From positions 1 through 64,000 of the forward strand of contig NIVC01000006.1 of the NCBI GenBank assembly GCA_002269645.1: DNA of 64,000 nt, written 5' to 3'. Both the position numbers and the translations under genes were made by a program. Below are positions 451 to 51,400 of the stretch, piece by piece. Every line of letters begins with the position of its first letter. Position 1 is the stretch's first letter. The DNA is from Macrostomum lignano. Taxonomy: Eukaryota. The notes under the pieces were generated by a model that saw nothing but the letters and a program-made list of their open reading frames with translations, was not told where the DNA came from and did no database searches.

Positions 451-492
451 TCAGACTTTCCTGAGTTGAGCTAGGACGCGTCTGAAACTCAC

Positions 493-7519: not shown

Positions 7520-10328
7520 TTAGGCGGCAGCTCCGCTCAGCTTTTTCAAGGCTCCGACGCCCATCTCCTGGTACTCCTGCCGGCTAATCCAGAACTTATC
7601 GTCGTGATCCTTCATAATATCGGCCAGGATAGCGCCGCCCAGGAACACCATGTGCTTGCGCCTGGGCGGATCCTCGATTCGGATTTTAAACTTGCTCAAT
7701 CGTTCCGTGTCGCCTTTGAGCACCTGCTCCAGGTACAACTGCTTCATTTCCCTCTCTAGCCGGCTGGGCAGACCCGGGTACATTGTGGTGCCGCCCGATA
7801 GCACAATCTTCTTGTAGAACTCGGGCCTGATGTCCATGTCCGCCTGCTGGATGGTGTTGAACAGCAGTTCCGCCACGCCAACCCCGTCTACATCCACCAG
7901 GTGAGGCTGGAATAACGCCTCGGGAGCTTGAAAGCGCTCGCCACTTACCTGTGGTGTTTGGGGGGGGGCAACTGGCGGTTAATAAGCTGTTCTAGTTTTA
8001 CCGTCATCCCATTCCCCTCCTCCCTCTCGTTAACCTCTCCATCTCCCTTCCCTCTCATATCCCTTGCCTCCCATCTGCCTTCCCTCCCATCTCCCTTCCC
8101 TCTTATCTGCCTTCCCTCTAATCTCCCTTCCCTGTCAACTGCCTTTCCTCCCATCTCCCTTCCCTCCCATCTCCCTTCTCTTTCATATCCCTTTCCCTTT
8201 ATACCCCTTCCCTTCCATCTCCCTTCTCATCCCATTCTCTACACCTCAGAAGAATCTCCATCCGCTCCTCTTGTGTCACATCTCAATCCATCTTCTCAGC
8301 GGCCACCCATCGGCTCACCTTGATGACGCGGCCATCCGGCAGGGTGTACTTCTCGACCAGCACGGTGGTCTCCAGCGACAGCCGCTCCTCCTGAGCAATA
8401 TCGTAAGCCACATAGCACAGACGCTCCTTCAGCTGACGGATTGTCTCAAAATCAGCGCTAGCATTAAAAGCGTAGCCTCTGAGCAGCAGGAGCTTGATGA
8501 GATAGCGCGTGATGTCCCGGCCGGCAATGTTCAGCCGCTTGGTGAGATGCGGCAATGCGAAGCCGTCGTACACCGGGCAGATGTGGGTGACGCCGTCGCC
8601 TGAGTCAACTACAACTCCAGTGAGCAGGCCTTGAGCATAGAGGGTCAGCACCGCCTGAAATGTATAGTGCAAGGTCACTGCTCGTATTCTAGTGCTGAGG
8701 GTCGCAACTCATACACTGTACATAAGTTTCTACTTTGTACTTTTATTGGAGATGATAAATAGGCTGCTAACTCGCTAACTAACTACCCAACTAACTGACC
8801 AAGTGACTAACTAATTGACTAACTAACTGACTAACTGACTAACAAACAAATAAACTAACTAACTAACTGTCTGACTAACTAACTTACTAATAAAGTAAAT
8901 AACTAACTAATAACTAACGAGTAAGGTCACAATAACACGCCGAGACTTCACCTGAATAGCCACGTAGACTCCGGCAAAGTTGTACTTTTCAAACATTGCC
9001 TCAATCATGCGCTCCCGGTTCTTAGCCGGGTTCATGGGTGGCTCTGTCAGCAACACCTTGGTGTTCGGACAGTCCAGGTTCATCTTCTTCGGACCGAAGA
9101 TGTAGTCGTACAGGTGCAGCATGTCAGTCCAGTTGCTGACTATGCCGTTCTCCATTGGGTAGTTCACCTGCGATGGGAAGTAAGACAGGCAAATTAGCTG
9201 ACGTATATCTTTCCCTGCATTATACACTTCGACCATTGTGCTAATCTCGATTCCCATTGTAGAAGTAGAGAGTAGACTTCAGTCTTAATGGAACTACAGT
9301 TAGAACAACTTCCGGTTGTCGAACCTAATTGGAGATACAGTTAGAACAACTTCCGGTTCTCGAATCTAATTGGAGATACAGTTAGAACAACTTCCGGTTG
9401 TTGAATATAATTGTAGATACAGTTAGAACAACTTCAGGTTGTCGAACCTAATTGGAGATACAGTTAGAACAACTTCAGGTTGTCGAACCTAATTGGAGAT
9501 ACAGTTAGAACAACTTCAGGTTGTCGAACCTAATTGGAGATACAGTTAGAACAACTTCCGGTTGTCGAACCTAATTGGAGATACAGTTAGAACAACTTCC
9601 GGATGTCGAACCTAATTGGAGGTACAGTTAGACCAACTTCCGGTTGTCGAATCTAATTGGAGATACAGTTAGAACAACTTCCGGTTGTCGAATCTAATTG
9701 GAGATACAGTTAGAACAACTTCCGGTTGTCGAATCTAATTGGAGATACAGTTAAAACTTCCGGTTCTCTAATCTAATTGGAGATACAGTTAGAACAACTT
9801 CCGGTTCTCGAATCTAATTGGAGATACAGTTAGACCAACTTCCGGTTGTCAAATCTAATTGGAGATACAGTTAGACCAACTTCCGGTTGATAAAGCTGAA
9901 TTCCGAAGATAAATAATCTGATTACTTCCCTACTTCCGGTCTGACAGATCTGACTACAGTTGGACTGCTTCCGTTCATAAAAAAATCGCCATATTCAATA
10001 CTACTTCCGATTGTCGCAAAAGGCTATTCATTACTAGGTCCAGTCCCGGCTTCCGGAATTTAAACAGAGCTCTCGCCACTGTCACATTAAGAAGCGAGTG
10101 AAACGAAAAAAACATTTTTACCTGCAGCATCTGTCGAACTTCCGCAGCCTCGTCGCCCACCATCAGGTCGCGAATCTCCACGTCGCCAATTCGCGACGAG
10201 CTGCGCAGAATTGGCCGGCCAACCAGAGACGGGAAAATGTGCTCGGGATAATTCGCGCCGGCCCGGCCGCACTTGACAAATCCCGTGCCATTGTCGCATA
10301 CAACCACGTGTCTGCCTTTGCTATCCAT
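7520..10328 (-). CDS. ACTR2: Actin-related protein 2; exons 10328-10122, 9167-8952, 8654-8319, 7948-7520; 395 aa
   Basis: [66 protein letters not shown] are ARP2 signatures. All junctions are phase-0 GT-AG. Confidence 0.97.
8000..8240. repeat. Pyrimidine-rich degenerate repeat in ARP2 intron 3
   Basis: CATCTCCCTTCCCTC-like units. Confidence 0.8.
9290..9890. repeat. 41-bp minisatellite in ARP2 intron 1
   Basis: TGGAGATACAGTTAGAACAACTTCCGGTTGTCGAACCTAAT tandem copies with an internal ACAAC/GTTGT palindrome. Confidence 0.95.
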
Positions 10329-17420: not shown

Positions 17421-17877
17421 GGGCGCCAAAGTACTAGGGCTCGATTCCTGGGCGTCAGCTGTACACTACTCTTTTATAGACGTTAATCAAACAAATAAAA
17501 GACAGGCAGCCCAAGAATTCAATCCAAGAAAAAGGCGAGAACAGCAACAGCCAATTCGGACGCACACGGAGAGACGGCACAATTAAGCGATGAAGTTAAT
17601 CTCGCGAATTGCGCTCTCTGCGTGTGCGCTTGAATCATCATCACTTGACCAGCAGTTCTGCATCAATGAGCATCATTGCTTTATTAAATTTATATATAGT
17701 TACTAAACTAATCTGGTTAACAAAGTCACAGGGAAGTATAGGCTCGAAATTGGGATAAAGTGAGTCATAGAAGCATAGCAGAGAGAAAAAATTCAGGCGT
17801 TACACATGCAGTTTGAATATTTTTACTATCATCATTTTATCGTGTGTAAGAAACCGTGCTTGCTTATGATTAGAAGT

Positions 17878-19073
17878 TCACTTCTTCTTGGCGGTGAGAC
17901 CTGCGCCAGCGTTGAACTTAAGAAGATAATATCCCCGTCCTGCACCACATAGTCCCTGCCCTTCTGCTTGTATTTGCCTTTGGCTTTCACCTCGCTCTCC
18001 GAGCCGCACTCTTTATAATCTTCGAAGCTCATAACCTCGGCCATGATGAAGCCATTCTCCATGTCGGAGTGAATCTTGCCGGCAGCCTGAGGCGCTTTAG
18101 TATTTAGCGGAATTGTCCAAGCTTTCACTTCGTCTTTGCCGGCGGTGAAAAAGTACTGCAGCTGCAGAGCCTTGTAGCCGGTTGAGATGATTTTGCCCAG
18201 AGCCGAGCTCACCCCGTGCTCCTTAGAGAACTCAGCCCTCTGCTCATCGGTCATGTCCGCCCATTTAAACTCCAGCTCAGCGGACAGCGGGATCACTGCG
18301 GCTCCCGGATCGTGCTGGTCAATCCACTCCTTGATCTTTGGCAACCATTTGTTCTTCTTCCGAATGAAGTCCTTCTCGCTCAGGTTAACCAGGTACACGA
18401 TTGGCTTAGCGGTGATGAACAGGTGCTCGTTGAGCAAATCGATTTCTTTGTCATTCCACTGCTCGAACCGAAGCGACCGTTTCTCCTCGACAACGATCCG
18501 GTGCACCTTCTGGAAGGCTTCAAACAGCGCCGTTTTGGACTTGTCGCCGCCGCGGGTGACCACCTTCTCCAGCTTCTCAAACTCCTTCACAATGTAGGCC
18601 TCATCTTTCAGCCGGAGCTCCTCGGAGATGATTTCAAGATCGCGGATGGGATCTACTTCGCCTTCAATGTGGGTGACCTCCTGGCAGTCGAATGCGCGCA
18701 CCATGTGGAACAGCGCGTCAACGCCGCGGATATTGCTAAGGAAAGCGTTGCCAAGGCCCTGGCCTTCGCTGGCGCCTTTAACTAGGCCTGCAATGTCCCA
18801 GACATTGAGATAGGCGGGCACCCTGCTGGCAGGCTTCCAGTGCTCGCACAGCCATTCCCACCTGTCGTCTGGCACAGCCACCCGGCTCTCGTGCGGATCA
18901 ATAGTGCAAAATGGGAAATTCTCGGCCGGAGCCGAGCTCTTCGTCAGCACGTTGAAGAATGTACTTTTGCCAACGTTGGGCAGGCCGACAATGCCGATCT
19001 TGAGGTTGCTGCCCATCCGGCCAATGATTGGCGGGTTTTTCGGCTCATCTGCTCCCTTCTTCTTTGGCGGCAT
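17878..19073 (-). CDS. OLA1: Obg-like ATPase 1 (YchF family), intronless, about 398 aa after correcting a 1-nt deletion near 17921
   Basis: [45 protein letters not shown] and a TGS domain with YVVQDGDII. Restoring one base gives the expected [15 protein letters not shown] end. AATAAA at 17680-17685. Confidence 0.95.
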
Positions 19074-19289
19074 TCTGCTGTATCAGGCAGATTTACTCTC
19101 GAGTTCTGGCTGGCTGTCTAGTCTGTCTCACTCGCTAACTCTGAACTGGACCTGCTGCTGCCTGACCTGCTTAGGCGCTGAAAAAGTTCAATCCGTACTT
19201 TTATTTTGTTGAATTCAATTTTAATGCTCTTAAGACTAAAATAGCAACGCAAAGCCAGTCGGAGAATATGGAAAGGTGGCAAAGAACCA

Positions 19290-19890
19290 GCAACTGAGGA
19301 TCTGGGAGGCTGGCCCAGCAACTGAGAATCTGAGAGGCTGGCACAGCAACTGAGAATCTAGGAGGCTGGCACAGCAACTGACACTCTAGGAGGCTGGCCC
19401 AACAACTGGGGATCTGGGAGGCTGGCCCAGCATGTAAAGATCTGGGAGGCTGGCCCAGCATGTAAAGATCTGGGAGGCTGGCCCAGCATGTAAAGATCTG
19501 GGAGGCTGGCCCAGCATGTAAAGATCTGGGAGGCTGGCCCAGCATGTAAAGATCTGGGAGGCTGGCCCAGCATGTAAAGATCTGGGAGGCTGGCCCAGCA
19601 TGTAAAGATCTGGGAGGCTGGCCCAGCATGTAAAGATCTGGGAGGCTGGCCCAGCATGTAAAGATCTGGGAGGCTGGTCCAGCAACTGAGGATCTGGGAG
19701 GCTGGCCCAGAAACTGAGGATCTGGGAGGCTGGCCTAGCAACTGACACTCTGGGAGGCTGGCCCAGCAACTGGGGATCTGGGAGGCTGGCCCAGCAACTA
19801 AGAATCTGGCCCAGCAACTGACACTCTGGGAGGCTGGCCCAGCAACTGGGAATCTGGCCCAGCAACTGAGGGGATCTGGGAGGCTGGCGG
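19290..19890. repeat. 28-bp minisatellite, GGCTGGCCCAGCA..GATCTGGGA family
   Basis: GGAGGCTGGCCCAGCATGTAAAGATCTG and AACTGAG variants. Confidence 0.95.
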
Positions 19891-20509: not shown

Positions 20510-23500
20510 TCAGGACCAATCTTCATCCGACAGCCAGTTCAATTGGATGGCGTCCTGGCACAGGCTTGGCGGGTAGGTTTGGTATTGCAGCTCGCTTGAT
20601 GGGTCCGCGTCTGCCAACGATCAATACTAATGAGCTAATAGCATGTCGCCTGGATGACACCATCCTGTTTCCTGTCTGCACCTGCTGCTTCCTGTCTGAC
20701 ACCATCCTGTTTCTTGTCTGCACCTTCTGCTTCCTGTCTGACACCATCCTGTTTCCTGTCTGCACCTTCTGCTTCCTGTCTGTCACCTGCTGTTTCCTGT
20801 CTGTCACCTGCTGTTTCCTGTCTGCCACCTGCTGTATCCTGTCTGCCTCCTGCTGTATCCTGTCTGCCTCCTGCTGTATCCTGTCTGTCACCTGCTGTTT
20901 CCCGTCTGCCACCTGCTGCTTCCTGTCTGTCACCTGCTGTTTCCTGTCTGTCACCTGCTGTTTCCTGTCTGTCACCTGCTGTTTCCTGTCTGTCACCTGC
21001 TGTTTCCTGTCTGTCACCTGCTGTTTCCTGTCTGTCACCTGCTGTTTCCTGTCTGTCACCTGCTGTTTCCTGTCTGCCAGCTGCTGTTTCCTGTCTGCCT
21101 CCTGCTGTTCTGTCTTCCACTTGCTGTTTCCTGTCTACCATTATGCTTTTTCCTGTCTGCCACCTGCTGTTTCCTGTCTGTCACCTGCTATTTCCTGTCT
21201 ACCATTATGCTGTTTCCTGTCTGCCAGCTGCTGTTTCCTGTCTGCCTCCTGCTGTTCTGTCTTCCACTTGCTGTTTCCTGTCTACCATTATGCTTTTTCC
21301 TGTCTGCCACCTGCTGTTTCCTGTCTGTCACCTGCTGTTTCCTGTCTACCATTATGCTGTTTCCTGTCTGCCAGCTGCTGTTTCCTGTCTGCCATTATGC
21401 TGTTTCCTGTCTGTCACCTGCTGTTTCCTGTCTACCATTATGCTGTTCCCTGTCTGCCACCTGCTGTTCCCTGTCTGCCACCTGCTGTTTCCTGTCTGCC
21501 TCCTGTAGTTTCCAATACATTCTAATTTTACGACTATCCTGATCCAACTGTTTCCACAGTGTAAATATACTTCAGGCAAATCATTACCGTCAGAGTAGAA
21601 CGGCACCGAGGTCGACTTGAAATTGCCGCCGCCGCCGCCGCCGTCGTCGTACCTGGCCAGCAGCTGGCCGACTGTCGCCGTCTCGCAGCCGAACTCCGCC
21701 AGCCGGTGCCGCAGCTCGCCGCCAGCCTCAGCCTCGCCGCTGCAATCGTCCGGCACAAGCAGAAGAAATTCGCGGTGCCGGCAGCGCAGGCGGGTCTGCA
21801 ATTCGGCGAGGCCGTCAACGCAGCCGAGCAGCCCGGCGCCGCCGGAGCCGCCTTCGCCAGGCAGCAGCGAGTCGACGGCCCAGCGGCTGGCCTCCAGCAT
21901 CTCCAGACAGGCGGCCAGGCGCTGCCGCTCCGATTTGGCTTTCAACGAAGCGGCCACGGATGCCCCGGCGGCTTCAGTCGCGGCATCTCGCAAACGGCGA
22001 AGGTCGCGAGCTCGAATCCCGATTGGCCAGCGGCTGTCGCGGCGGCCTGCGGCGGCTAACAGGCGGGTCAGGGTGTCCGGCTGGTAGCGCAGCGGGTCGC
22101 CAAGCAGCAGGCAGGGACCGCCGGTGACGGGGAAAATTGGTTGGAGAGATGAGGCCAGCGATGAGGCTGAGCTGGAGGCTGGGGAAGTGGGAATAAACAA
22201 TATGGATGTGGCAATCATAAATGTGTTCATTATAGCTTAGTCTCAACTGGGAAGCTGGGAGGCTGGCCCAGCAACTGGGGATCTGGGAGGCTGGCCCAGC
22301 TACTGAGGATCTGGGAGGCTGGCCCAGCAACTGAGGATCTGGGAGGCTGGCCCAGCAACTGAGGATCTGGGAGGCTGGCCCAGCAACTGAGGATCTGGGA
22401 GGCTGGCCCAGCAACTGAGGATCTGGGAGGCTGGCCCAGCAACTGAGGGGAGCTGAGAGGCTGGCCCAGCAACTGAGGATCTGGGAGGCTGGCACAGCAA
22501 CTGACACTCTGGGAGGCTGGCCTAGCAACTGACACTCTGGGAGGCTGGCCCAGCAACTGAGGGGAGCTGAGAGGCTGGCCCAGCAACTGAGGATCTGGGA
22601 GGCAGGCCCAGCAACTGACGCTTTGGGAGGCTGACCCTGAAATCGAAGATCTGGGAGGCTGGCCCAGCAACTGAGGATCTGGGAGGCTGGCCCAGCAACT
22701 GACACGCTGGGAGGCTGGCCCAGCAACTGAGGATCTGGGAGGCTGACCCTGAAACTGAGGATCTGGGAGGCTGGCCTAGCAACTAAGGATCAGGGAGGCT
22801 GGCCCAGCAACTGAGGATCAGGGAGGCTGGCCTAGCAACTAAGGATCAGGGAGGCTGGCCCAGCAACTGAGGATCTGGGAGGCTGGCCCAGCAACTGAGG
22901 ATCAGGGAGGCTGGCCTAGCTACTGAGGATCCCTATGAGCAGTCTCACCCGTAGCAGCGCAGGCAGCCGCCGCAGCCGCCCTGGCCTGCTCAAAAGCCAG
23001 AAATCGAACGTCGCGCCGTTTCCGAAGCTCCAGCAGGCCGGGCAGCTGCCAGGGCAACCTGTCCAGAGCGGAGGCGTGGGCGTACACCACGAGCTGCTGC
23101 TGCTGCTGCTGCTGCAGTTGCTGAATGCCATCCCGTCGGGGTCCACGGCACTGCAGCAGCAGGGAGGCGTGCAGCGGATCGCACTGCCGATGTCCGAGGC
23201 TGGTCAGGCGGCTGGCCAGATCTGCGCACTCCGCACTGTCCGAGATGCCGACCACGTGGAAGAATGGCGGCGGTGGAGGAGGAAGCGGAGGCGGCGGCGG
23301 CACAATGGACTGCTGCTGTGGCTGCAGTAGCGCAGATAGCAGAGAAGTAGGATAGTACTAATTAGATGACGAGACATTTAGCCTTAATAATACAGTCATA
23401 GTTACTCCTGCTGTTTACCACAAAACTGCGTTAATTTTTGCTGAGGTTTCTTTTATAGGTAGGTCGCATTTTTGGTAAAAAAAAGTAAGTTTAAGTTCCA

Positions 23501-26500
23501 TAGTTTCTGTAATCCATATCTCATTAGTAGTATTAAATAATTTTATAATTTTTGGGATTCTCGTGAGTTCACTTGAAAGGTCAAGGGTTCGATTCCTGAT
23601 TCTACTCGAGAGTTCACCCAGCTGTAAAATGGGTAACCAGCATTAGCTGGGGTAACTGAGGGTGTGAGTGGCGAACCCCCAGTCCTTGGACTGAACAGCC
23701 GTACGCAGCCTTCAGATGCGACGATGCGCCACGCAATAGCTGCGGCTGAGCTGTAGGTTGCACATATGGCCCAATTGGGGCAGGTTTATCAATTATTAAT
23801 ATTATTATTTTGGACAGTCTTGGCCCAGCGGCTAGCAACTGACACTCTTCGAGGCTGGCCCAGCAACTGAGGATCTGGGAGGCTGACCCTGAAACTGAGG
23901 ATCTGGGAGGCTGACCCTGAAACTGAGGATCTGGGAGGCTGACCCTGAAACTGAGGATCTGGGAGGCTGACCCTGAAACTGAGGATCTGGGAGGCTGACC
24001 CTGAAACTGAGGATCTGGGAGGCTGACCCTGAAACTGAGGATCTGGGAGGCTGACCCTGAAACTGAGGATCTGGGAGGCTGACCCTGAAACTGAGGATCT
24101 GGGAGGCTGGCTTAGCAACTAAGGATCAGGGAGGCTGGCTCAGCAACTGAGGATCAGGGAGGCTGGCCTAGCAACTAAGGATCAGGGAGGCTGGCCCAGC
24201 AATTGAGGATCAGGGAGGCTGGCCTAGTAACTAAGGATCAGGGAGGCTTAAATTTAAAATTCAAGACTGCTTATTAATTGTCAAACTTGAATAATCCGGA
24301 TTCTGCATTCTGCAACTATTGTGGTTCAGAAAAAGACTCAGCAGTGTTAAGGGTAGGGCAGAGAATTTATTGACTAGAAAAAAGGGTCAGACATACCGCA
24401 TGGCTGTAATAGGCGGCAAGGAAGCTGTGATCGATCGAGCCGGCTTGCCTAGCAACGGTTGCTAGGGCGGCGGACGCCCGCTGCTGCTGCTGCTGCTTAG
24501 CGACGGCCAGAGCGGCCAGCAGTCTGGTTTGCATCTGAGCGAACAGAGGCGGCGGCTGCTGCGGCTGAGACGGTGGCGCCTCATCGTCAAGGAAAGCATC
24601 GGCCAGGCCAATCTTGTAGCTGCGGATCATCGCGTCCTGGCGTTCCCGATAGGTCAGCGCGGAGCCGCCCGCGGCCGGCTCAGCAGCGGCAGGCGGCGGC
24701 GGTGGCTGCTGCCGGGGCATTGCGAGCTGGGAATTATTGTGATGGAGATGAGGCGGTTCAGGCGACGGCCGGAGCCTGGGCGGCAAGCAGCCTGCGGCAG
24801 GGGGTAAGGAGATTGAAGCAGCTGGGAGCGTTGCGTGGGCACTGAAGGGCTTGCTAATCTAAGGGATAGAAATGAACTAACATGGATACATGTGGGCAGG
24901 TTATTAGGAAGACGCTGCTTATAGTAGTATTCGGGATTTCAGAACGCAAGTCTTCGTATAGGGGGTATTAAGAGATTTTTACTTAAAGTACCTTTACGAC
25001 TTTCGGTATTTACGTTGGGAGATTTTCGGAATCAGCTGTATTGCGGGGTTTTATGAATCAGCTGAATTGGGAGATTTTGGGAATTAGCTGAATTGGGAGA
25101 TTTTGGGAATCAGCTGAATTGGGAAATTTTGGGAATTAGCTGAATTCGGACTTTAGGAATTAGCTGAATTGGGGGACTTTGGGAATTAGCTGAATTGGGG
25201 AATTTTAGGTATGAGCTGAATTGGGAAATTTTTGGAAGCAGCTAAAGTGGGAGATTTTGGGAAATTGTGTGAATTTGGGATATTTCGGGAATTAGCTTAA
25301 TTGGGGGATTTTGGGAATTAGGTGAATTGCACGAGAGGGGGCGGTTCGGAATCAGCTGAATTATGAGATTTAGGAACAGTTGAGTTGGGAGATTTTGAGA
25401 ATCAGCTAAATAAGGTTTTTCCTTTCAAAATGAGTTAGTTTTTTAAATCAGAGCTGTGCCAACTCAGAACTCACACTTCTGCTGAGCAATGCTTCCAGCA
25501 GCGGCAGATTCGAAAAGAATATCGCTGGGCCACTGCAAACTGGGCGCCGGCGACAAAGGTCGACGCAGAACTTGCCGTTGACAGGCGGTCATCGTCCAGT
25601 CGGACAGACCCTTCGACAGACACCGGCTGGCCGAGAACCGCCTCGGTGGCAGTGGCGGCAGGGCTCCAATCGACGCCGCTGTCAAATTCGGCAAACAGCC
25701 GTCAGCGGCTCTTAGAAACCGGCGTGCAGTCGAGCGCAGTCGATGCCGCAGTCGACGAATTCGCCGACGAACAATCGAGCCAGACTTGGCGGCGCCGTCA
25801 ATCCCAGCGTCAACATCGTCGACTACATCGAACTTGTCAAAGCCGATGCTCACAGGACTGCCGACATTGCCGCCACCGCTGCCGCTGTTATCATCGCCGT
25901 CAAAATCGTCGTCGTCGCTTGTCAAAGACGCGGCCGCCGTCAGAGAGTCTGGATAGAGTTGGTTGATCGCCAACTGCTCGTTGCTAAGGACGCCACCGCC
26001 GCCCGCGTAGAAACCGTCCAGGTAGCGCAGTAGAGCGAAGCCGACGTTGCGAACGCTTCTTGAGCGACGCTTGGGGTCTGCGGTAAGGTCCGGAAATGTG
26101 GACTGCCAGACTAGTGAAACATGGACTGCCAGACTAGTGAAACATGGATTGCAAGACTAGTGAAACATGGATTGCAAGACTAAGGAAACATGGATTGCTA
26201 GACTAGGGAAATATGAATTGCTAGACTAGGGAAATATGGATTGCTAGACTAGGGAAATATGGATTGCTAGACTAGGGAAATATGGATTGCTAGACTAGGG
26301 AAATATGGATTGCTAGACTAGGGAAATATGGATTGCTAGACTAGGGAAATATGGATTGCTAGACTAGGGAAATATGGATTGCTAGACTAGGGAAATATGG
26401 ATTGCTAGACTAGTGAAACATGGATTGCTAGACTAGTGAAACATGGATTGCTAGACTAGTGAAACATGGTTTGCTAGACTAGGGAAATATGGATTGCTAG

Positions 26501-29500
26501 ACTAGGGAAATATGGATTGCTAGACTAGGGAAATATGGATTGCTAGACTAGGGAAATATGGATTGCTAGACTAGGGAAATATGGATTGCTAGACTAGGGA
26601 AATATGGATTGCTAGACTAGGGAAATATGGATTGCTAGACTAGGGAAATATGGATTGCTAGACTAGGGAAATATGGATTGCTAGACTAAGGAAACATGGA
26701 TTGCTAGACTAGTGAAACATGGATTGCTAGACTAGGGAAATATGGATTGCTAGACTAGGGAAATATGGATTGCTAGACTAGGGAAATATGGATTGCTAGA
26801 CTAAGGAAACATGGATTGCTAGACTAGGGAAATATGGATTGCTAGACTAGGGAAATATGGATTGCTAGACTAGGGAAATATGGATTGCTAGACTAGGGAA
26901 ATATGGATTGCTAGACTAGGGAAATATGGATTGCTAGACTAGGGAAATATGGATTGCTAGACTAAGGAAACATGGATTGCTAGACTAGGGAAATATGGAT
27001 TGCTAGACTAGGGAAATATGGATTATCAGACTAGTGAAATATGGATTGCTAGACTAGGGAAATATGGATTGCTAGACTAGGGAAATATGGATTGCTAGAC
27101 TAGGGAAATATGGATTGCTAGACTAGGGAAATATGGATTGCTAGACTAGGGAAATATGGATTGCTAGACTAGGGAAATATGGATTGCTAGACTAGGGAAA
27201 TATGGATTGCTAGACTAGGGAAATATGGATTGCTAGACTAGGGAAATATGGATTGCTAGACTAGGGAAATATGGATTGCTAGACTAGGGAAATATGGATT
27301 GCTAGACTAGGGAAATATGGATTGCTAGACTAGGGAAATATGGATTGCTAGACTAGGGAAATATGGATTGCTAGACTAAGGAAACATGGATTGCTAGACT
27401 AGGGAAATATGGATTGCTAGACTAGGGAAATATGGATTGCTAGACTAGGGAAATATGGATTGCTAGACTAGGGAAATATGGATTGCTAGACTAGGGAAAT
27501 ATGGATTGCTAGACTAGGGAAATATGGATTGCTAGACTAGGGAAATATGGATTGCTAGACTAGTGAAACATGGATTGCTAGACTAGTGAAACATGGATTG
27601 CTAGACTAGTGAAACATGGTTTGCTAGACTAGGGAAATATGGATTGCTAGACTAGGGAAATATGGATTGCTAGACTAGGGAAATACGGATTGCTAGACTA
27701 GGGAAATATGGATTGCTAGACTAGGGAAATATGGATTGCTAGACTAGGGAAATATGGATTGCTAGACTAGGGAAATATGGATTGCTAGACTAGGGAAATA
27801 TGGATTGCTAGACTAGGGAAATATGGATTGCTAGACTAGGGAAATATGGATTGCTAGACTAGGGAAATATGGATTGCTAGACTAGGGAAACATAGATTGC
27901 TAGACTAGGGAAATATGGATTGCTAGACTATTCAAACGACTATCAAAAGCTCGCCATACCGCTGCTATCCAACGTGCCCCGCTCCATCAGCCACTCGGTC
28001 AGGGCTGCCTGAGCGGTGCGGCCGAGTTGACGCCGCAGGTGTAGCGGCAGCGACTCCTCCAACAGGGCGGCGTTGGCCCGTCGTGTTAGTCGAGACGCCG
28101 CATCCACTGGCAGACGGCGAAGACGTCGACGTGGGGGAAAATGGCGAGACTGCTGAGAAGGCTGCGACTGGGATTCAGCTGGAATGGTGAGGTCAGCGTG
28201 GGTGAAAATTAAAGTGCAGATGCAGCAGCCGATTGACAATCCAACTATCAGAGTAGAGTGACAATCTGACTACAGAGTGACAATCTGACTATCAGAGTGA
28301 CAATTTGACTATCAGAGTGACAATTCGACTATGAGAGTGACAATCTGACTATCAGAGTGACAATTTGACTATGAGAGTGACAATTTGACTATCAGAGTGA
28401 CAATTTGACTATCAGTGACAATCTGACTATCAGAGTGACAATTCGACTATGAGAGTGACAATCTGACTATCAGAGTGACAATTTGACTATGAGAGTGACA
28501 ATTTGACTATCAGAGTGACAATCTGACTATGAGAGTGACAATTCGACTATGAGAGTGACATCTGACTATCAGAGTGACAATTTGACTGTCAGAGTGACAA
28601 TCTGACTATCAGAGTGACAATCTGACTATGAGAGTGACAATTTGACTATCAGAGTGACAATCTGACTATCAGAGTGACAATTCGACTATCAGAGTGACAA
28701 TCTGACTATCAGAGTGACAATCTGACTATCAGGACTAAAATCTGGTGAGTTTTAACTTCAATAGTATACACCTGGCGCATACCTGAGCAGTCGGCAGTGG
28801 ACTGAGTATTATCCCGCAAAATGACGGCCAGATTCTGTTTAAAATCTGCCAGCGCCAATTCAGCCTGGGATCTGTCACCGGAATCGGAAGCGATAGCAGC
28901 GCGACCCGAGCCGGCGGATTGGGCCAGGCCACGGCCAAGACGGCGAACTTCTGACACCAGACTGGGCGACTTGGCGAGGCAGGTGGACAGCAGGTTGTCT
29001 GAAGAGGGTTAGGGTGATGCTGCAGATAAGCTTTCATGTGAGCAGTGAGGATCTGGGAGTGCGGCAGGTGCTCAGCAACTGAGGATCTGGGAGTGCGGCA
29101 GGTGGCCCAGCAACTGAGGATCTGGGAGTGCGGCAGGTGGCCCAGCAACTGAGGATCTGGGAGTGCGGCAGGTGGCCCAGCAACTGAGGATCTGGGAGTG
29201 CGGCAGGTGCTCAGCAACTGAGGATCTGGGAGTGCGGCAGGTGGCCCAGCAACTGAGGATCTGGGAGTGCGGCAGGTGCTCAGCAACTGAGGATCTGGGA
29301 GTGCGGCAGGTGACCCAGCAACTGAGGATCTGGGAGTGCGGCAGGTGGCCCAGCAACTGAGGATCTGGGAGTGCGGCAGGTGGCCCAGCAACTGAGGATC
29401 TGGGAGTGCGGCAGGTGGCCCAGCAACTGAGGATCTGGGAGTGCGGCAGGTGGCCCAGCAACTGAGGATCTGGGAGTGCGGCAGGTGGCCCAGCAACTGA

Positions 29501-30464
29501 GGATCTGGGAGTGCGGCAGGTGGCCCAGCAACTGAGGATCTGGGAGGAATAAAAGTACTCAAAGTAGGCCACTCACCAACAGACGCAGGTAAGTCGATGC
29601 TGTCATCATCGGAGCCGCTGCTCACTTGAGCCTCCAAGTTGCACGCAGCGGTGAAGCGGGCGTCAATGAAGCTCTGCAGTTGGCTCACCGCTGTAGTTGG
29701 CGAAATTTCTGCATTGTTGAAAAAATGAAAATAAAGCAGTTGCAGCACCATTGTGTAGGAGAATCCATCTTAGATAAGTAGGGACCTGAGCGGAGTGAAC
29801 TATAGCTCATTCGGTAAATATAGGGACCTGAGCGGAGTGAACTATAGCTCATTCGGTAAATATAGGGACCTGAGCGGAGTTAACTATTGCTCACTCGGTA
29901 AAAATAGGGACCTGAGCGGAGTACTGGCATAAATAGAACAATGCATTAAAACTACATATATTGCACACCTGCATCTGTTCCATTGACTTCAGAAGCTTTA
30001 TCAGCCGGTTTGCTGCTAGCAGATGCATTGGCAACAACAACAGCAGAAGCAGTATCAGAAGAGGCTGGCAAGCACCGCGTCAGAGCCACCTGAGTCTCCG
30101 ATAGCAGACAATCTGCCAAATCGTCAAGCGATGAATCTCCATTTCCAGCATCCTCATTGCTGGCATTGTTATTAAACTCCTCGGCGGCCTTGCAAACTTC
30201 ATCAAGCTGCTTAGCTAGGCTAGCCAGATTCAGCTTAGCAATCTTGTCCACCGAGGCGCAAATGGCAGCTTCACTGGGCTGCCCATCGCTAGATGACGGT
30301 GCCAGTTTCCGCTTCCGGTTGCCATTTCCCGTCTGGCTGGAACTGCCATCCAGGCCAGATTGGGTCAGCCGGTTCAAAAAGTTGGACACTTCATCGGCTG
30401 CTGTGGCCGAGGCTGCATCAACCTCGGGCATGTCCGGGCCATTGCCCAGCTTGGAGGTGAGCAT
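20510..30464 (-). CDS. Predicted 1041-aa protein with a TASOR-like (DomII + PIN-like) C-terminus; exons 30464-29969, 29708-29577, 28998-28783, 28178-27960, 26077-25475, 24791-24397, 23321-22949, 22178-21588, 20610-20510
   Basis: Nine GC-rich exons join through phase-compatible GT-AG sites into one 3126-nt ORF. DLASRLTSLGHRQCDP, LVVYAH..LPGLLELRKRRDVRFLAF, PIFPVTGG..LLGD and LAELQ..RHREFLLLV..FGCETATVGQLLARY are colinear with the TASOR C-terminus as I recall it. Gene model confidence is higher than family confidence. Confidence 0.7.
20650..21510. repeat. 21-bp minisatellite in the last intron of the TASOR-like gene
   Basis: CACCTGCTGTTTCCTGTCTGT tandem copies. Confidence 0.95.
22245..24250. 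repeat. 28-bp family arrays at 22245-22930 and 23820-24250
   Basis: GGGAGGCTGGCCCAGCAACTGAGGATCT and GGCTGACCCTGAAACTGAGG variants. Confidence 0.95.
23555..23720 (+). mobile_element. tRNA-derived SINE fragment in an intron of the TASOR-like gene
   Basis: B box GGTTCGATTCC (23586-23596) followed by CACCCAGCTGTAAAATGGGTA, a motif typical of conserved SINE central domains. Confidence 0.5.
25020..25420. repeat. Degenerate 26-bp intronic minisatellite
   Basis: GAATTAGCTGAATTGGGAGATTTTGG units. Confidence 0.85.
26095..27930. repeat. 23-bp minisatellite, about 1.8 kb, highly homogeneous
   Basis: TATGGATTGCTAGACTAGGGAAA tandem copies filling almost the whole intron. Confidence 0.97.
28245..28735. 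repeat. 20-bp intronic minisatellite
   Basis: TCAGAGTGACAATCTGACTA tandem copies. Confidence 0.95.
29045..29550. repeat. 35-bp derivative of the 28-bp family
   Basis: GGGAGTGCGGCAGGTGGCCCAGCAACTGAGGATCT tandem copies. Confidence 0.95.
29778..29925. repeat. 42-bp repeat, 3-4 copies, in intron 1 of the TASOR-like gene
   Basis: TAGGGACCTGAGCGGAGTGAACTATAGCTCATTCGGTAAATA copies. Confidence 0.9.
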
Positions 30465-31419
30465 GTGACAGCTGCTGCTGTTTGACTCTCGAGTTGCAGG
30501 TGAAAGTTTTAATAAATTGATTGACTTGGCACTGGGAGAGCAAAAGTTGCAGCATAAATGCAGCAGCAAGTAATTCAATACAATTGTGAAAATATACAAC
30601 CCTTTAGATTCAATTTAGCAGCTATAAGGAGGAAACTGTCAGAGTCAGATGCAGATAAACATTGATTTTAAGTATTTCTTTATTGCAGAATTTTCTACAG
30701 CTTCTATAATACTTTATGAAGATAGGAAATTTTAAAAAGCAATTTAGTGCTAAGTGATACCTGATTTTGAAGAGGCTTAGTGTGTATAGATTTCTATTAA
30801 ATATACCTAGACTATTGTGATAATATCTTTAAGATTTGTGCCATTTAAATAAATGCCAATTCATCAAATTAACACTATCAAAATTTTGGCTTTCTAAAAA
30901 ATTAGGCTGCAACAAAAGTTTTGAGCATTTTTGAGCATTTTGAGCACCCTATCCATAGCCCATAGTCCAGATCATGGCAGGCGTAGGCTGGAATGAAAAT
31001 TCATGTTTTTTAAATTTTATGCTGACATAAAATAAAAAATTTTTCACACCAATACTAAAATTGTTTATATGCCATTTTTTCAAAGCATATATATTTTTAG
31101 GAATTCAAAACTTTTATTTAACTTTAAAATGGCTGTTTTTTTTTGCAAAAAACTGAATATTGTTTGTTTTAATTTGGCCTTTCTTATAATTTTACGTTAT
31201 TATTTTCAATTTTAGTTTCCAATTATTTTTAAAGAGCTTTCAATGTTGGTTGATATTTAACTACACAATTACACTAGCCTTGAACTTGGCTATTTTTGTA
31301 TGCCGACTGTGTACACTTCATGTCAAACCTGAAAATTCTATATGCCAAGTGTATGCCAAGATTGTCAGCGAGACCAAAAATATGCCGGAAAATTCTGGCG
31401 AAAAGGCCACCTTCGAATG

Positions 31420-45434: not shown

Positions 45435-48400
45435 ATGCCAGACACTGCACAGCAGCAGCAGAAGGCCGCCAACGGTGCCAGCGGCAGCGGCGGCAAGTTC
45501 ATCGACAGCGTCAACCCTGAAGATCCAGAATATCAACGCCAGATGATACGGCCAGCCGAGATCAAGGAGGACCTGACCCTCATGGATCAGCGGAAGCGAG
45601 TGTCTCTGATACTGAACTCCGAGGCCTTCAAGCAGGAGCTGGAAGAGATTATCCAATCCCAGTTGAAGTCTGGCGCCCATCCGGCTTCGCTAATTGCGCT
45701 GCAGCAGATCTCCGACCTGCTGGTGCCGCACTCTGGCGGCGGAGGCCGCAGCGGCGCGCCGGCACCGGCTGGCCAAGTGGTGACGCCCGTCAACGATATC
45801 CGATCCGTTGACGTGGCCGACTATGACAAAGGCGAGCGGCTGCTTCGCTGCAAGCTGGCCGCCGTCTATAGGCTGCTGGACATCAACGCCTGGTCCGCTG
45901 GCGGCCTGTCCAGCTTGGTTACTGTGAGTGACTGCGTGCTCTATACCCAAGAGTTGTCACTCATTTTTTAAGCTAAAACAGCCCCATTCTGAAGAATTGA
46001 CCGTCAGGCCTCCTAAAGAATCGTCCCTCAGCCATAAAAAATCGGTCCTCAGCCATGAAAAATCGCCCCTCAGCCAAAAAGATCGTCCCTCAGCCATAAA
46101 GATCGTCCCTCAGCCATAAAGAATCGCCCCTCAGCCATAAAGAATCGCCCTCAGCCATAAAGAATCGCCCCTCGGCCACAAAGAATCACCCCTCATTCAA
46201 AGAGAGTCGCCACTCAGTCATCAAGAATCGCCCCTCAGTCATCAAGAATCGCCCCTCGGCCATAAAGTTCTTCCCTCGGCCACAAGGAATCACCCTCAGT
46301 CAAAGAGAATCGCCCCTCAGCCATAAATAATCACCCCTCATTCAAAGAGAGTCGCCACTCAGTCATCAAGAATCGCCCCTCAGTCATCAAGAATCGCCCC
46401 TCGGCCATAAAGTTCTTCCCTCGGCCACAAGGAATCACCCCTCAGTCAAAGAGAATCGCCCCTCAGCCATAAATAATCGCCCTCAATCATAAAGAATTGC
46501 CCCTTAGTCATAAAGAATCGCCCCTCAGTCATAAAGAATCGCCCCTCAGTCATTAAGAATCGCCCCTCAGTCATTAAGAATCGCCCCTCAGCCATACAGA
46601 ATCATCCTCTGTCATCGTTCTCCTAAATAATTGCGCTAAAATCCTCAATCCCGCCCCTGCCTCCCGCCCTCCCAAACGCGCAGGCCCGCGTCAACAAGGA
46701 GACGCAGCACTTCCTGGTGGCCCCGCACGGCCTCCGCCATAGCGAAGTGACGGCCAGCAGCCTGGCTAAAGTCGGTCTGAATGGCGAGGTCGCCAACTCG
46801 GGCAGCTCGGTGTTCGGCGTCAACCAAACCGCCTGGTTGGCCGCGGCCGCGATTCACTCGGCCAGGCCGGATGTCCGGTCGGTTGTCCAGCTGGCCACGC
46901 CGCGAGTTGTCGCCCTGTCCAACAGCCGGCGCGGCCTGCTGCCGCTGTGCATCGAGGCCTGCGTGCTGGGCGAGGCCGCCCTGGCCGAATCGGCCGATTC
47001 CGGCGCCATTAGCGCCGTATTGGCGCCAAACCATCGCATTCTAATAGTGCGCAATCGGGGCGCCTTTGCCCTAGGCGAAACCCTGGAAGAGGCCTGGATG
47101 TACGCCAGCCTGCTGGCCAGAGCCGCTGCCACTCAGCTGGTCTGTCTGCAGGCCGCAGGCGGCAACGTGGACCAGCTGTTGCTGCCCAGCCCGGAGTCCG
47201 CCGCCCGCGCCTTCGAAGTCGGCAACCAAGCCGCCGGCGGGGTGAACCTGAAGACCGCCAGCGGGCACAAGTGGCGCCGAGGCGAGCTGGAGTTCGAAGC
47301 GGCGATGCGCCGCCTGGACTCCGAGGGCTACCGCACCGGCTACGCCTATCACGAGCCCAACGTGCGCACCGAGCGTCGGGTGAAACGACACGAGGACGTG
47401 GAAATTCCGCCATCCTCGTCCTCGTTTACGTACGTGTTCGACGGCGACGTGGAGCATTCGAAACTGGTGACGGCCAAGCAGGTGCTGGCGGCCGGGCAGC
47501 GCGGCCCGCACGGCGAATGGCTGACCACGCCCAACAGCTACCACCGCGAGGAGATCGAAGAGATCAACACGGACAATCCGAAGAAGTTCACCAAATGGGT
47601 TCGCGACGGCCCCGATGCCAAGACGGCTGGCGGTACGCCGATAAAAATCAGCAACCCGAATCAGTTCGCGCCGCAGGGCGCCGATCCTAAGGAGTTCCGC
47701 AACCAGCAGCGCAAGGTAAAAAAGTGCAAATTCAATCTGAAAATTGGCCCAGGCTGTCGTTCGATTCGCAGTCAGGAAGGCCAGCCTTCAAGGTGCAGAG
47801 AGTTTAAAACGACGTTTCCTTTTATATTAGCTTTCCCAAGCTTTGATCATCAGGTGTTCTATCCAACCATTGTAAACAATGACTAGCTCAACGTGACGGC
47901 AGCATTCTCAGCTCTCAATTACAATGAATAAAACACAATAAACTAATGCAGGTCAAGGACCACTACTACAAGGACTCCAAGGATGCCGGGCCTCAGAGCC
48001 GACTGTTCAAAGACCAGCTGACCACTGACGAGGTCAGCCGCATGATGGAGGAAGGCCGCGCCAAGGCCGCCTCGGACGGCTCAGTAGTGGTCGGCGCCGC
48101 TAGCAAGGGCATCATCGCCAGGCAGCATCAGCACAATGCTCTGGTCTATCAAAATTATTATTCGCCTAATCCATTCTCCGATGTCACGGATGAACAGTTG
48201 AACAACTACGAGGAGAGCGTGCTGGGCAAGAAGAAAGGCGGCGGCGGCACCACGGAGACGGAGACCGACAGCGAGGCCGAAGGCGGCCGCGCCAAGTCTC
48301 AGGCTGGCGCTAGCGAGGCGCCGCTGCCCAGCATACCGGAGGATCGGGCTAGCGCGCCCGGCGGCGCCAAACAGCCGACCGCCGCTGGCGCTGTCACGTC

Positions 48401-51400
48401 CGACTCTGAGACCGGTTTGTCCTCACAAAATCATTTTTATCATGAAATTTTGTTTTTAGTACTCAAGTTATTATCTTTTAATTAACCCGTTGATATAAAG
48501 GTAAGTAGAGATTTTTTAATTTACAGAATCTTTTGAAAGATTTGCTGCCAATTGATTTTCTTATATATTAGCATTGAGTTGAGTAATCTATCAGTTGTTG
48601 TGTACTTATTTCTACTAACAGATATGCATGTTTGCTTAATATTGTCTTTTGTGTGTTACCTTACTCCAAAACTCACCTGTTTGTTGTGATTAACATTGTC
48701 TTCGATAAAATTTGAAAAACTATCCACTAACAGACAGCTCAGTGCGGCAGCAGCCGCAGAAGCAGCAGCAGCCGCAGGAGCAGCAGAAGGCGAAGTCGCT
48801 TCAGCGGCACGAGTCTGACCGCCTCGCCGAGGCTCAGAGGCAGCTAGGTTAGTAGCGCTTAGACTGGCTTGGGCTAGGGCTAACACCGCAGTACTTTAGC
48901 TGTTGGAAGCTGGTGTAGATATTTATGTTCAGCATCCTGGAATCATTAATTAGTTAGTTAATTAATTAGTTAATTTCTAATTAACCAACCAACCCGCGTT
49001 GGCGTGAATTCTTCCTAATTTTCAACAGCCACTGGCCCAGCTAAGAGCGCCACAGTTGACAGGGCCCAGTCTCAGCGTCTGGCAGGAGGTATTTTAATCA
49101 GATTTATTATCCAAATTAACGATTGGCACTTAATTGCAATTGACTACTATCAAATATTTGTAGCGCACTTAACAACATAATCTATTAGCTAAGCAAAAGA
49201 TTTATATTAAGATTATGCAAGTACGAGTATTAATTATTTACTTTAATCTGATGGGTTGTGTTTATTTCGAAACCTGGAGAGCAAGAACTTATTCAGATTT
49301 TAGCGCTGCTCTGCACAAGTTGTCGCTTCCCTTCCTTTGGTGTCGTGTTGTTTACTAATTGTTAACTTTTTTAATCCGTACGATTACCAAATTTGTGTGT
49401 TAGATTAATTCCTGCTACCGGGCGTTTGATTGTCGCCTAGCTTAATTGGTTTGCGTTTAACATTGAGATGCCCATTTGCTACAGAGCAGTGTACATCGAA
49501 TTCAGGAGGTCGCTACTACCTATTAAGGCATCTGTGTTTACAAGCACCAACCTCATGGAACCTTAGATCTTCCCAGTGACGTTTCCTAGAAATGAGATCT
49601 CTCATTAGATCTCCCAGTGACGTTTCCTTGTCAAGCCCTATACACCCCTTTCTATCCCTACCCCACTCCCCCACCTCGCACCCTTTCAATTCCTACCCCA
49701 CTGTCCCCCACCTCACACCCTTCCAATTCCTACCCCACTGTCCCCCACCTCACACCTTTTCAATTCCTACCCCAACTGTCCCCACCTCACACCCTTCCAA
49801 TTCCTACCCCACTGTCCCCCACCTCACACCCTTTCCATTCCTATCCCACTGTCCCCCACCTCACACCCTTTCCATTCCTATCCCACTGTCCCCCACCTCA
49901 CCCTTTCCATTCCTATCCCACTGTCCCCCACCTCACACCCTTTCCATTCCTATCCCACTGTCCCCCACCTCACACCCTTTCCATTCCTACCCCACTTGGG
50001 CCCCACCTCACGCCATCTAGGATATCATAATAAAAATTCAATGCAGAAACTAACTCATCTTTCATGTTGTTTACGCATGTGTTTGCTATGCGCAATGCAC
50101 AATTTTCAGGCATTAGATTTTTTCGCAAAGCAAAGCATCCGGGTAAGTTAAAATGCAGCAATCATGCAAGGAAACATGTAAATCTACGTGAATATTCAGT
50201 GAATTTGTTATATAATATGATATACTACATTGCACATTTAATGTATTAAAGCTTTCCCACTTGAACCAGCTCAATTATTTCCCGCCTAACTATTTAGCCG
50301 TGACTTTGAAAGACTTGCTGCTATAAAAACTTGCAAGGACCAGTAAAAACTCTTAGTCTGAACGTTTTCTGGTTTTGTATCTTTATCGCTGCCTACTGCG
50401 ACTGTCAGAAATAGTTGGGGTATGTAGGTTTTTACTACACTGCAACACAGGCATTACATGGATCTGTGCCCATTTCCTTTTCTGTTATGCATTTAACGGG
50501 CTCTCTGGCCTGTCTGCAAAGTCAGTCAGTCCTACACGAATGTGCAGCAAGGGTTCCAAAGATCTTATTTTGACACTGCGCGTCTATATGCTTGTTTATC
50601 TCTGTATTTACAGACTGTTTGAGTTCTGTGTTTTATGAAACAATTTCATTCTGCGTGGAGGCAGCAGTCTGGACACGCATACTAATTTTCGTTCATTGCA
50701 CATGTGCGCCTGTTCTGTGCTGGTCTGCGCGCACAGGGCCGCAGGGCTGCAAGACCCGCTTTGCCCGTCTAAGAAGTGTGCGCGTGTGCGACGCTGGTGT
50801 TTGCTGATCTTCAATCTCGAAGCCTTGGAAAGCCAACTTAAGAACTGTAGCTATTTGCAATGTGCTGTATTGTTACTTGCTTTGTGCAACTTCGCAGTTT
50901 TGCGGCGAAGTCCGTCCGTCCATTTCTTGCTGGAGTATCCCTCCCCTCCCCAGTTCCAGTGCACCAATTTTGAGGCTAATTTTTTTAATTCAGGCCTTCG
51001 TATTTATCGGCTTGTGAGATGCAAGAATTGATTTGAAATCTAGTCAGTTTAATCTCCTAGTCTTCTTGAGCTTTTCTTGGACATCATTTCTTACACTATA
51101 GCGGGTTTCATTTCTTAGAAATCGGTTGTCTCGTATCTTCTCAGCGACCTTTTCTACAAATGAGCTCTCCCATTAGATCTTCTCAGCGACCTTTCCTACA
51201 AATGAGATCTCCCATTAGATCTTCTCAGTGTCCTTTCCTACAAATGAGATCTCCCATTAGATCTTCTCAGTGTCCTTTCCTACAAATGAGATCTCCCATT
51301 AGATCTTCTCAGTGTCCTTTCCTACAAATGAGATCTCCCATTAGATCTTCTCAGTGTCCTTTCCTACAAATGAGATCTCCCATTAGATCTTCTCAGTGTC

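What the first reader, a model, noticed from the sequence alone, without database searches (positions are those of the whole stretch)
20510..30464. Candidate invertebrate TASOR/HUSH-like silencing factor (DomII-PIN) hidden across repeat-filled introns
Seen: nine exons join into an unbroken 1041-codon ORF that the six-frame track shows only as fragments. The exons at 23321-22949 and 22178-21588 carry five motifs in order: DLASRLTSLGHRQCDP, LVVYAH..LPGLLELRKRRDVRF, IFPVTGG, RW..IRARDLRRLR and LAELQ..RHREFLLLV..GCETATV. These are colinear with human TASOR as I recall it (EYLIKLGNTECHP, LLIIIQ..IPGLVTLKKLPCVSF, ELFVSGG, KWQWKVH, LIRLQ..RHIVFLTE..GIVVATA). Established: TASOR scaffolds the HUSH transposon-silencing complex and shares a SPOC-DomII-PIN layout with fission yeast RITS subunit Chp1. 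Inference: this is a divergent HUSH/RITS-type component outside vertebrates. I see no pseudo-PARP (DUF3715) or SPOC domain; the N-terminal 680 aa or so are lineage-specific, with an RKRK NLS-like motif and Arg-rich helices, so the architecture may be new.
Basis: partly seen in the sequence, partly recalled or inferred. Interest (0 to 1): 0.85.

Follow-up and report, generated by a model that had tools for sequence, protein, structure and literature searches.

The report
Flatworm gene with faint TASOR-like domain
This is a real multi-exon gene of the flatworm Macrostomum lignano whose C-terminal part weakly resembles the DomII (and perhaps PIN) module of the vertebrate transposon-silencing scaffold TASOR, but it lacks every TASOR part known to be needed for silencing, and its two halves may not be one protein.

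Summary
The window is Macrostomum lignano DNA (locus Mlig025502, three near-identical genome copies). Deposited proteins confirm junctions 1-5 and 7|8. The three NCBI models join exon 5 to an acceptor 65 nt further in (24726, not 24791). That shifts the frame and stops after 15 codons, so a single fusion protein is unproven.

I recovered them from a vertebrate TASOR gene fragment. Pfam's only hit on the whole protein is PF23314 (TASOR alpha/beta domain), near full length but below threshold (E 0.015; 0.0011 without the poly-Q; ten controls gave none). PIN_TASOR is not detected; only pairwise colinearity supports it, and that depends on the alignment settings. An exhaustive phmmer search found no relative outside M. 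lignano. AlphaFold models were too poor to use.

No pseudo-PARP, SPOC or chromodomain is present.

Verdict: probably a divergent protein carrying only the TASOR C-terminal module. A HUSH-like function is not shown.

The parts
29969..30464 (-). Exon 1, with ATG at 30464 (MLTSKL...). It contains the NLS-like NRKRKL motif (30303-30320).
   Evidence: The sequence and the 1|2 junction are identical in the NCBI and UniProt proteins.
29577..29708 (-). Exon 2
   Evidence: Junctions confirmed by PAA49707, PAA68323 and PAA94547.
28783..28998 (-). Exon 3
27960..28178 (-). Exon 4 (Arg-rich helix, RRRLRRL)
25475..26077 (-). Exon 5 (acidic DDDDFDGDD run and Arg-rich RRRIRRLRHRLR). This is the last exon confirmed to be in one protein with exon 1.
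24397..24791 (-). Pro/Gln-rich linker.
   Evidence: The coding frame is supported by codon statistics. The ML2-based model A0A1I8FQ82 includes sequence between 24791 and 24727.
24679..24726 (-). Alternative exon 6 start (acceptor at 24726) used by the three NCBI models. It shifts the frame and ends the N-terminal ORF at a TGA after 15 codons. An in-frame ATG for the C-terminal ORF lies at 24718-24720.
22949..23321 (-). Exon 7
   Evidence: The 7|8 junction is identical in A0A1I8HAZ4.
22986..23261 (-). TASOR alpha/beta (DomII)-like domain, aa 708-799, interrupted by a poly-Q insert
   Evidence: Pfam PF23314 at E 0.015 / 0.0011 over profile positions 6-82 of 95. Controls were negative. Pairwise z 4.5-4.9. 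hhalign gives the same register.
21588..22178 (-). Exon 8
21643..22137 (-). Region colinear with the TASOR PIN domain (IFPVTGG ... LLARYDD, aa 826-990). Homology is unproven.
   Evidence: No PF24630 hit. Pairwise BLOSUM45 z 3.7, with 2-6 of 1000 shuffles reaching the score; BLOSUM62 is not significant.
20510..20610 (-). Exon 9 (putative): 33 codons ending ...LNWLSDEDWS, with TGA at 20510-20512
   Evidence: Weak acceptor and no independent support.

Best explanation
This is a genuine Macrostomum lignano host gene (Mlig025502), present in three near-identical genome copies.

Anatomy:
- Exons 1-6 encode a long, low-complexity part rich in Ala, Ser, Arg and Asp, with no detectable domain. It carries an NLS-like RKRK motif and Arg-rich helices.
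- Exons 7-8 encode a folded alpha/beta module. I take it to be a very divergent relative of the C-terminal module of TASOR: DomII (aa 708-799) followed by a stretch colinear with the TASOR PIN-like domain (aa 826-990), with lineage-specific poly-Q, poly-Ala/Ser and Gly-rich inserts.
- The gene has none of the N-terminal TASOR parts (pseudo-PARP/DUF3715, SPOC, DomI).

Inferred mechanism (none of it shown here): the DomII-PIN-like module acts as a non-catalytic docking platform for a partner protein or RNA, as Chp1's C-terminal half does in fission yeast. The basic, disordered part would supply nuclear targeting and RNA or protein contacts. I cannot say whether it feeds into transposon or heterochromatin silencing.

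One protein or two depends on which exon 6 acceptor is used. Acceptor 24791 gives a 1041-aa fusion. Acceptor 24726, the annotated one, gives a 570-aa N-terminal protein plus a separate C-terminal ORF of about 462 aa starting at ATG 24720.
For: Real gene:
- Organism and locus identified at 99-100% identity.
- Three copies share synteny with OLA1 and an Arf-like GTPase gene.
- All three copies keep the full 1041-codon chain. Exons have no indels and 1.9-2.6 mismatches per kb, while unique non-coding sequence has indels and 2.7-4.9 mismatches per kb.

TASOR relation:
- PF23314 is the only Pfam hit, near full length, at E 0.015 / 0.0011.
- Ten shuffled or reversed controls gave no PF23314 hit.
- The pairwise DomII+PIN alignment to a vertebrate TASOR gives z 4.9-6.5, with 0-1 of 1500 shuffles reaching the score and Gumbel p of 2e-4 to 2e-3.
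- Matching domain pairs score higher than cross-domain control pairs, which give z 0.5-2.1.
- hhalign puts LTSLGHRQCDP on LIKLGNTECHP and LPGLLELRKRRDVRF on VPGLVTLKKLPCVSF.
- Even the poor AlphaFold models alternate helices and strands across aa 707-795.

Architecture:
- No other Pfam domain at E<=10.
- No GC-rich coding islands upstream of exon 1.
Against: - PF23314 scores 15.8-19.5 bits against a curated cut-off of 27.
- PF24630 (PIN_TASOR) is never detected.
- phmmer over 1.84 billion representatives finds only M. lignano sequences.
- The pairwise signal disappears with stricter gap costs or with BLOSUM62.
- hhalign with single-sequence profiles gives E 0.29.
- Both AlphaFold models are unusable (pLDDT 38 and 40), and Foldseek returns nothing meaningful.
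- The few differences between copies are mostly non-synonymous, so they show no purifying selection.
- The annotated transcripts break the N-C fusion.
Confidence: 0.5

Rival explanations
1. Chance resemblance. The gene is a fast-evolving, lineage-restricted M. lignano protein with no evolutionary relation to TASOR. The motif colinearity and the sub-threshold Pfam hit come from generic alpha/beta hydrophobic patterns.
For: - No significant hit by any curated threshold.
- No TASOR among the exhaustive phmmer hits.
- Pairwise significance depends on the matrix and gap settings.
- hhalign gives E 0.29.
- There is no structural confirmation.
Against: - Among 24,736 families, the single best hit is the one family that the independently read motifs point to, and it covers about 80% of the profile.
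- Ten composition-matched controls gave nothing better than E 0.11, and never this family.
- Matching domain pairs beat cross-domain control pairs.
Confidence: 0.3
2. Two proteins, not one. This is compatible with either view on homology. The N-terminal ORF (exons 1-5 plus 47 nt) ends in exon 6. The DomII/PIN-like part is then a separate ~462-aa product starting at ATG 24720. It would be made either from an alternatively processed mRNA or after spliced-leader trans-splicing at acceptor 24726, where the leader's terminal ATG would be in frame.
For: - All three NCBI models use acceptor 24726 and stop 15 codons later.
- No NCBI protein covers exons 6-9.
- The M. lignano spliced leader ends in ATG, about 30% of its genes are trans-spliced and 15% lie in operons (PMC8629364).
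- ATG|CTC GCA ATG CCC is in the C-terminal frame.
Against: - Acceptor 24791 has the better pyrimidine tract and comes first.
- The frame stays open from 24858 onwards.
- The older model A0A1I8FQ82 chains exons 5-8 and includes 24791-24727.
- Intron 5 has no canonical AATAAA signal.
- No read-level data were available.
Confidence: 0.4
3. A bona fide HUSH/RITS-type transposon-silencing scaffold.
For: Only the weak DomII/PIN-like similarity and the NLS-like and Arg-rich features.
Against: - DUF3715, SPOC and DomI, which are required for HUSH repression, are absent. DomII/PIN is dispensable in the human assay (PMC7532188).
- There is no chromodomain, unlike Chp1.
- Invertebrate TASOR-like proteins are defined by DUF3715-SPOC-DomI (PMC10578480), which this protein lacks.
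Confidence: 0.12

Closest known systems
Vertebrate TASOR (FAM208A) C-terminal module: DomII (Pfam PF23314) plus PIN (PF24630), human residues 1233-1466
   Same: - The sequence motifs come in the same order across about 280 aa.
- There is a near full-length but sub-threshold PF23314 match.
- Hydrophobic strands are followed by acidic residues where TASOR has FIVSDES and IVFLTE.
   Different: - No DUF3715, SPOC, DomI or recognisable Periphilin-binding region.
- The PIN profile is not detected.
- Large poly-Q, Ala/Ser and Gly inserts.
- The N-terminal 680 aa are unrelated.
- Intron positions do not match.
Fission yeast Chp1 (RITS), C-terminal SPOC-DomII-PIN (PDB 3TIX)
   Same: It would share the DomII-PIN layout, through the relation between TASOR and Chp1 reported in PMC7532188.
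   Different: - No chromodomain or SPOC.
- No sequence hit to any PDB chain.
- Even vertebrate TASOR does not hit Chp1 by sequence.
- The structural comparison could not be done.
Invertebrate 'TASOR-like' proteins (DUF3715-SPOC-DomI), PMC10578480
   Same: Both are metazoan, non-vertebrate relatives of TASOR.
   Different: Those proteins are defined by the N-terminal half of TASOR. This one would carry only the C-terminal half, so the two have complementary rather than overlapping architecture.

Membership tests
TASOR / TASOR2 (HUSH scaffold) | N-terminal pseudo-PARP domain (DUF3715, PF12509) | tested here: not met
   No hit at E<=10 in the 1041-aa model. There are no coding-like GC islands or ORFs upstream of exon 1.
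TASOR / TASOR2 (HUSH scaffold) | SPOC domain next to the pseudo-PARP | tested here: not met
   No SPOC family hit in Pfam at E<=10.
TASOR / TASOR2 (HUSH scaffold) | DomI (MPP8-binding) and the Periphilin-binding segment | not testable with these tools
   No profile for these segments was returned, and no TASOR full-length sequence could be retrieved.
TASOR / TASOR2 (HUSH scaffold) | DomII = TASOR alpha/beta domain (PF23314) | tested here: inconclusive
   This is the only Pfam hit, at aa 708-799 over profile positions 6-82 of 95. It scores 15.8 bits (E 0.015), or 19.5 bits (E 0.0011) without the poly-Q, against a cut-off of 27. Controls were negative.
TASOR / TASOR2 (HUSH scaffold) | PIN-like domain (PF24630) | tested here: not met
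   No hit in four natural or trimmed versions. The only support is a pairwise signal that depends on the settings (BLOSUM45 z 3.7).
TASOR / TASOR2 (HUSH scaffold) | Partners MPP8 and Periphilin present in the same genome; role in H3K9me3 and transposon repression | not testable with these tools
   The M. lignano proteome could not be searched. No expression or functional data are available.
Chp1 (RITS) | N-terminal H3K9me-binding chromodomain | tested here: not met
   No chromodomain hit.
Chp1 (RITS) | DomII-PIN fold as in PDB 3TIX | tested here: inconclusive
   The AlphaFold single-sequence models have pLDDT 38 and 40. Foldseek gave no match at E<=0.001.

The most novel reading that the evidence does not exclude
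The DomII-PIN module of TASOR/Chp1 may exist in flatworms as an independent unit. It would be detached from the DUF3715-SPOC-DomI half that defines invertebrate TASOR-like proteins. It would be either fused to a lineage-specific disordered protein or expressed alone, depending on an alternative 3' splice site or a spliced-leader acceptor in exon 6. This would amount to a 'split TASOR', and would show that the HUSH scaffold was assembled from two ancient modules.
Probability: 0.2. Interest if true: 0.65.

Novelty: new variant of a known kind. Interest (0 to 1): 0.4.

Why it matters
The function of TASOR's conserved C-terminal DomII/PIN module is unknown, since it is dispensable in the standard HUSH reporter assay. 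It has been described only in vertebrate TASOR and in yeast Chp1. A protein that carries this module without the rest of TASOR, in an animal where RNAi knock-down is routine, would allow the module to be studied in isolation. It would also bear on how HUSH-like complexes were assembled during evolution. At present the evidence supports only a probable remote relationship, not a silencing function.

Tried and rejected
- Brute-force enumeration of splice chains timed out. A restricted enumeration showed well over a hundred open chains, so openness alone was rejected as evidence.
- Word-indexed homology searches with the full protein and with a low-complexity-masked C-terminus found only M. lignano proteins.
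- Exhaustive phmmer with aa 706-1041 found only M. lignano proteins.
- phmmer against PDB sequences found nothing relevant for the flatworm protein. It also showed that no TASOR C-terminal structure is deposited and that TASOR itself does not hit Chp1 by sequence.
- Pfam on exon 8, natural and with inserts trimmed, gave no PIN_TASOR hit.
- Two AlphaFold2 single-sequence runs (full C-terminus and a trimmed construct) gave pLDDT 38 and 40. Foldseek on the second returned only ribosomal-protein noise. The structural test is therefore uninformative rather than negative.
- hhalign against a four-sequence vertebrate alignment had Neff 1 on both sides and gave E 0.29.
- A metagenome scan for relatives of exon 8 found none.
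- The literature has no mention of Mlig025502, or of TASOR in flatworms.
- The supplements of PMC10578480 are not held.
- A dN/dS comparison between genome copies was abandoned because there are only 5-8 differences.
- Upstream exons encoding DUF3715 or SPOC were looked for and not found.
- The UniProt names for fragments of this gene ('Fibrous sheath-interacting protein 1', 'Adenylate kinase', 'Nuclear receptor domain-containing protein') have no Pfam support and were disregarded.
Full report
**Identity of the locus.** A search with the assembled protein returned Macrostomum lignano proteins at 99-100% identity: PAA49707, PAA68323 and PAA94547 (BOX15_Mlig025502g4/g1/g6), plus UniProt fragments. 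Fetching their contigs gave three genome copies (L010, L011, L012). In all three the same neighbours follow the gene: an OLA1/YchF gene and an Arf-like GTPase gene. L012 is identical to the window in all nine exons. The other two copies are 99.1-100% identical, with no indels in exons. Intron lengths differ widely because the introns are filled with tandem repeats.

**The exon chain.**
The nine minus-strand exons are 30464-29969, 29708-29577, 28998-28783, 28178-27960, 26077-25475, 24791-24397, 23321-22949, 22178-21588 and 20610-20510. They give 1041 codons plus TGA, and every intron is GT...CAG.
- Openness alone is weak evidence, because well over a hundred alternative site combinations also stay open.
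- Codon statistics are stronger. In each of the nine exons the proposed frame has the best codon-usage log-odds and no internal stop. Exons 6-9 show GC of 0.73/0.54/0.76 at codon positions 1/2/3.
- Between genome copies, exons carry no indels, whereas unique non-coding sequence does.
- Independent models confirm junctions 1|2 to 4|5 and 7|8 (A0A1I8HAZ4).

**The break in the chain.**
- All three NCBI models join exon 5 to an acceptor at 24726, not 24791. The frame shifts and the CDS ends 15 codons later...AQQK SRNAPAAATAAACRC stop. The coordinates were checked on L012.
- No NCBI protein covers exons 6-9.
- With that acceptor, the C-terminal ORF would start at ATG 24720.
- The M. lignano spliced leader ends in ATG (PMC8629364). 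Joined at 24726, that ATG would be in frame with the C-terminal ORF. This is a speculative but testable route to a separate protein.
- In favour of the fusion: acceptor 24791 has the better pyrimidine tract and comes first, and an older, frameshift-ridden model (A0A1I8FQ82) includes the 24791-24727 segment and chains exons 5-8.
- I could not resolve this without read-level data.

**Are the motifs and the recalled TASOR sequence real?**
- The five flatworm motifs are present, in order.
- The 8-kb contig around one of them (L001) contains successive TASOR exons: EYLIKLGNTECHP...LLIIIQNEDIAGFIHK, VPGLVTLKKLPCVSF...ELFVSGGFIVSDES...KWQWKVH......LIRLQAQNIQQRHIVFLT and ...NGIVVASAEA.
- Joined, these score 6.5e-31 for PF23314 and 1.5e-48 for PF24630. 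The recollection was accurate.

**Tests of homology.**
- *Pfam.* The only family hitting the 1041-aa model at E<=10 is PF23314 (TASOR alpha/beta domain), at aa 708-799 over profile positions 6-82 of 95. It scores 12.6 bits (E 0.15) for the full 1041-aa protein and 15.8 bits (E 0.015) for the C-terminal 354 aa. Without the poly-Q insert it scores 19.5 bits, E 0.0011. All of these are below the curated 27 bits.
- *Controls.* One reversed and nine shuffled versions never hit PF23314. Their best hit to any family was E 0.11.
- *PIN.* PF24630 was never detected, in either the natural or the trimmed sequence.
- *Exhaustive search.* phmmer over 1.84 billion representatives found only M. lignano sequences.
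- *Pairwise, by domain.* Against the L001 TASOR with BLOSUM45, DomII gives z 4.6-4.9 and the PIN region z 3.7 (2-6 of 1000 shuffles reach the score). Cross-domain controls give z 0.5-2.1. With BLOSUM62 and default gaps, DomII is weak (z 2.75) and the PIN signal is lost.
- *Pairwise, both domains.* Together they give z 4.9-6.5, with 0-1 of 1500 shuffles reaching the score and Gumbel p of 2e-4 to 2e-3. This holds at two of three gap settings and fails at the strictest.
- *hhalign.* It reproduces the expected register but is not significant with single-sequence profiles.
- *Structure.* AlphaFold2 without homologues gave pLDDT 38 and 40, and Foldseek gave noise.

**Architecture.** No DUF3715, SPOC, chromodomain or any other Pfam domain is present. 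The AT-rich 15 kb upstream of exon 1 has no coding-like islands. The N-terminal 680 aa are rich in Ala, Ser, Leu, Arg and Asp. They carry an NRKRKL motif, Arg-rich helices and an acidic run.

**Comparison with what is known.**
- Human TASOR needs DUF3715, SPOC and DomI for repression. DomII/PIN (1233-1466) is conserved but dispensable in the reporter assay, and was related to Chp1 by structure prediction (PMC7532188).
- Invertebrate TASOR-like proteins are defined by DUF3715-SPOC-DomI. The full architecture with DomII and PIN is described for vertebrates (PMC10578480).
- The flatworm protein would therefore carry only the half of TASOR whose function is unknown. It fails the membership tests for TASOR and for Chp1 as families. 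At most it shares one module with them.

**Verdict.**
- The gene is real and its C-terminal exons are coding.
- Homology of aa 708-799 to TASOR DomII is probable (about 0.7).
- Homology of the following region to the TASOR PIN domain is possible (about 0.5).
- A HUSH/RITS-like silencing role is unsupported (about 0.1).
- Whether the N-terminal and C-terminal halves form one protein is open.

Noticed in passing
window 19287-19848, 22244-22931, 23851-24248, 29046-29546: A single 28-bp minisatellite family (core ACTGAGGATCTGGGAGGCTG, with a 35-bp variant in intron 2) forms four arrays, all in the same orientation. They lie only in introns 2, 6 and 7 and just 3' of this gene. There are 58 hits against 0 expected in the 64-kb window. 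Its origin is unexplained.
   Followed up: partly
window 20665-21513, 25015-29922: The other introns each hold a different tandem array: 21-bp (intron 8), 26-bp (intron 5), 23-bp x 80 (intron 4), 20-bp (intron 3) and 42-bp (intron 1). Intron lengths differ by up to four-fold (709 to 2756 bp in intron 4) between the three genome copies, while the exons are nearly identical.
   Followed up: partly
window 30531-30533: The annotated transcript and partial CDS start within 2 nt of a strong acceptor-like site (TTTTGCTCTCCCAG|T). This suggests the mRNA 5' end is made by spliced-leader trans-splicing (PMC8629364).
   Followed up: no
window 24718-24791: Two candidate exon 6 acceptors lie 65 nt apart and decide between a fusion protein and two ORFs. 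The M. lignano spliced leader ends in ATG, and at acceptor 24726 that ATG would be in frame with the C-terminal ORF.
   Followed up: partly
window 17832-19073 (-): There is an intronless 413-codon OLA1/YchF-type GTPase ORF directly downstream. The same gene is annotated as 398 aa in the two other genome copies.
   Followed up: no
window 45435-48485 (+), 8283-8678 (-), 451-1077 (-): Other likely genes in the window, judged by eye from the ORF translations: adducin / class II aldolase-like exons, an actin or actin-related exon, and a pepsin/BACE-like aspartic protease exon.
   Followed up: no
UniProt A0A1I8I800, A0A1I8HAZ4, A0A1I8FQ82 (fragments of this gene): Database names for fragments of this gene ('Fibrous sheath-interacting protein 1', 'Adenylate kinase', 'Nuclear receptor domain-containing protein') have no support in the Pfam scan and look like annotation artefacts.
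   Followed up: partly
window 20513-20542 (-): The putative C-terminal tail ...QLNWLSDEDWS is an acidic-aromatic motif of the kind often used as a short linear docking motif. It rests on the unconfirmed exon 9.
   Followed up: no
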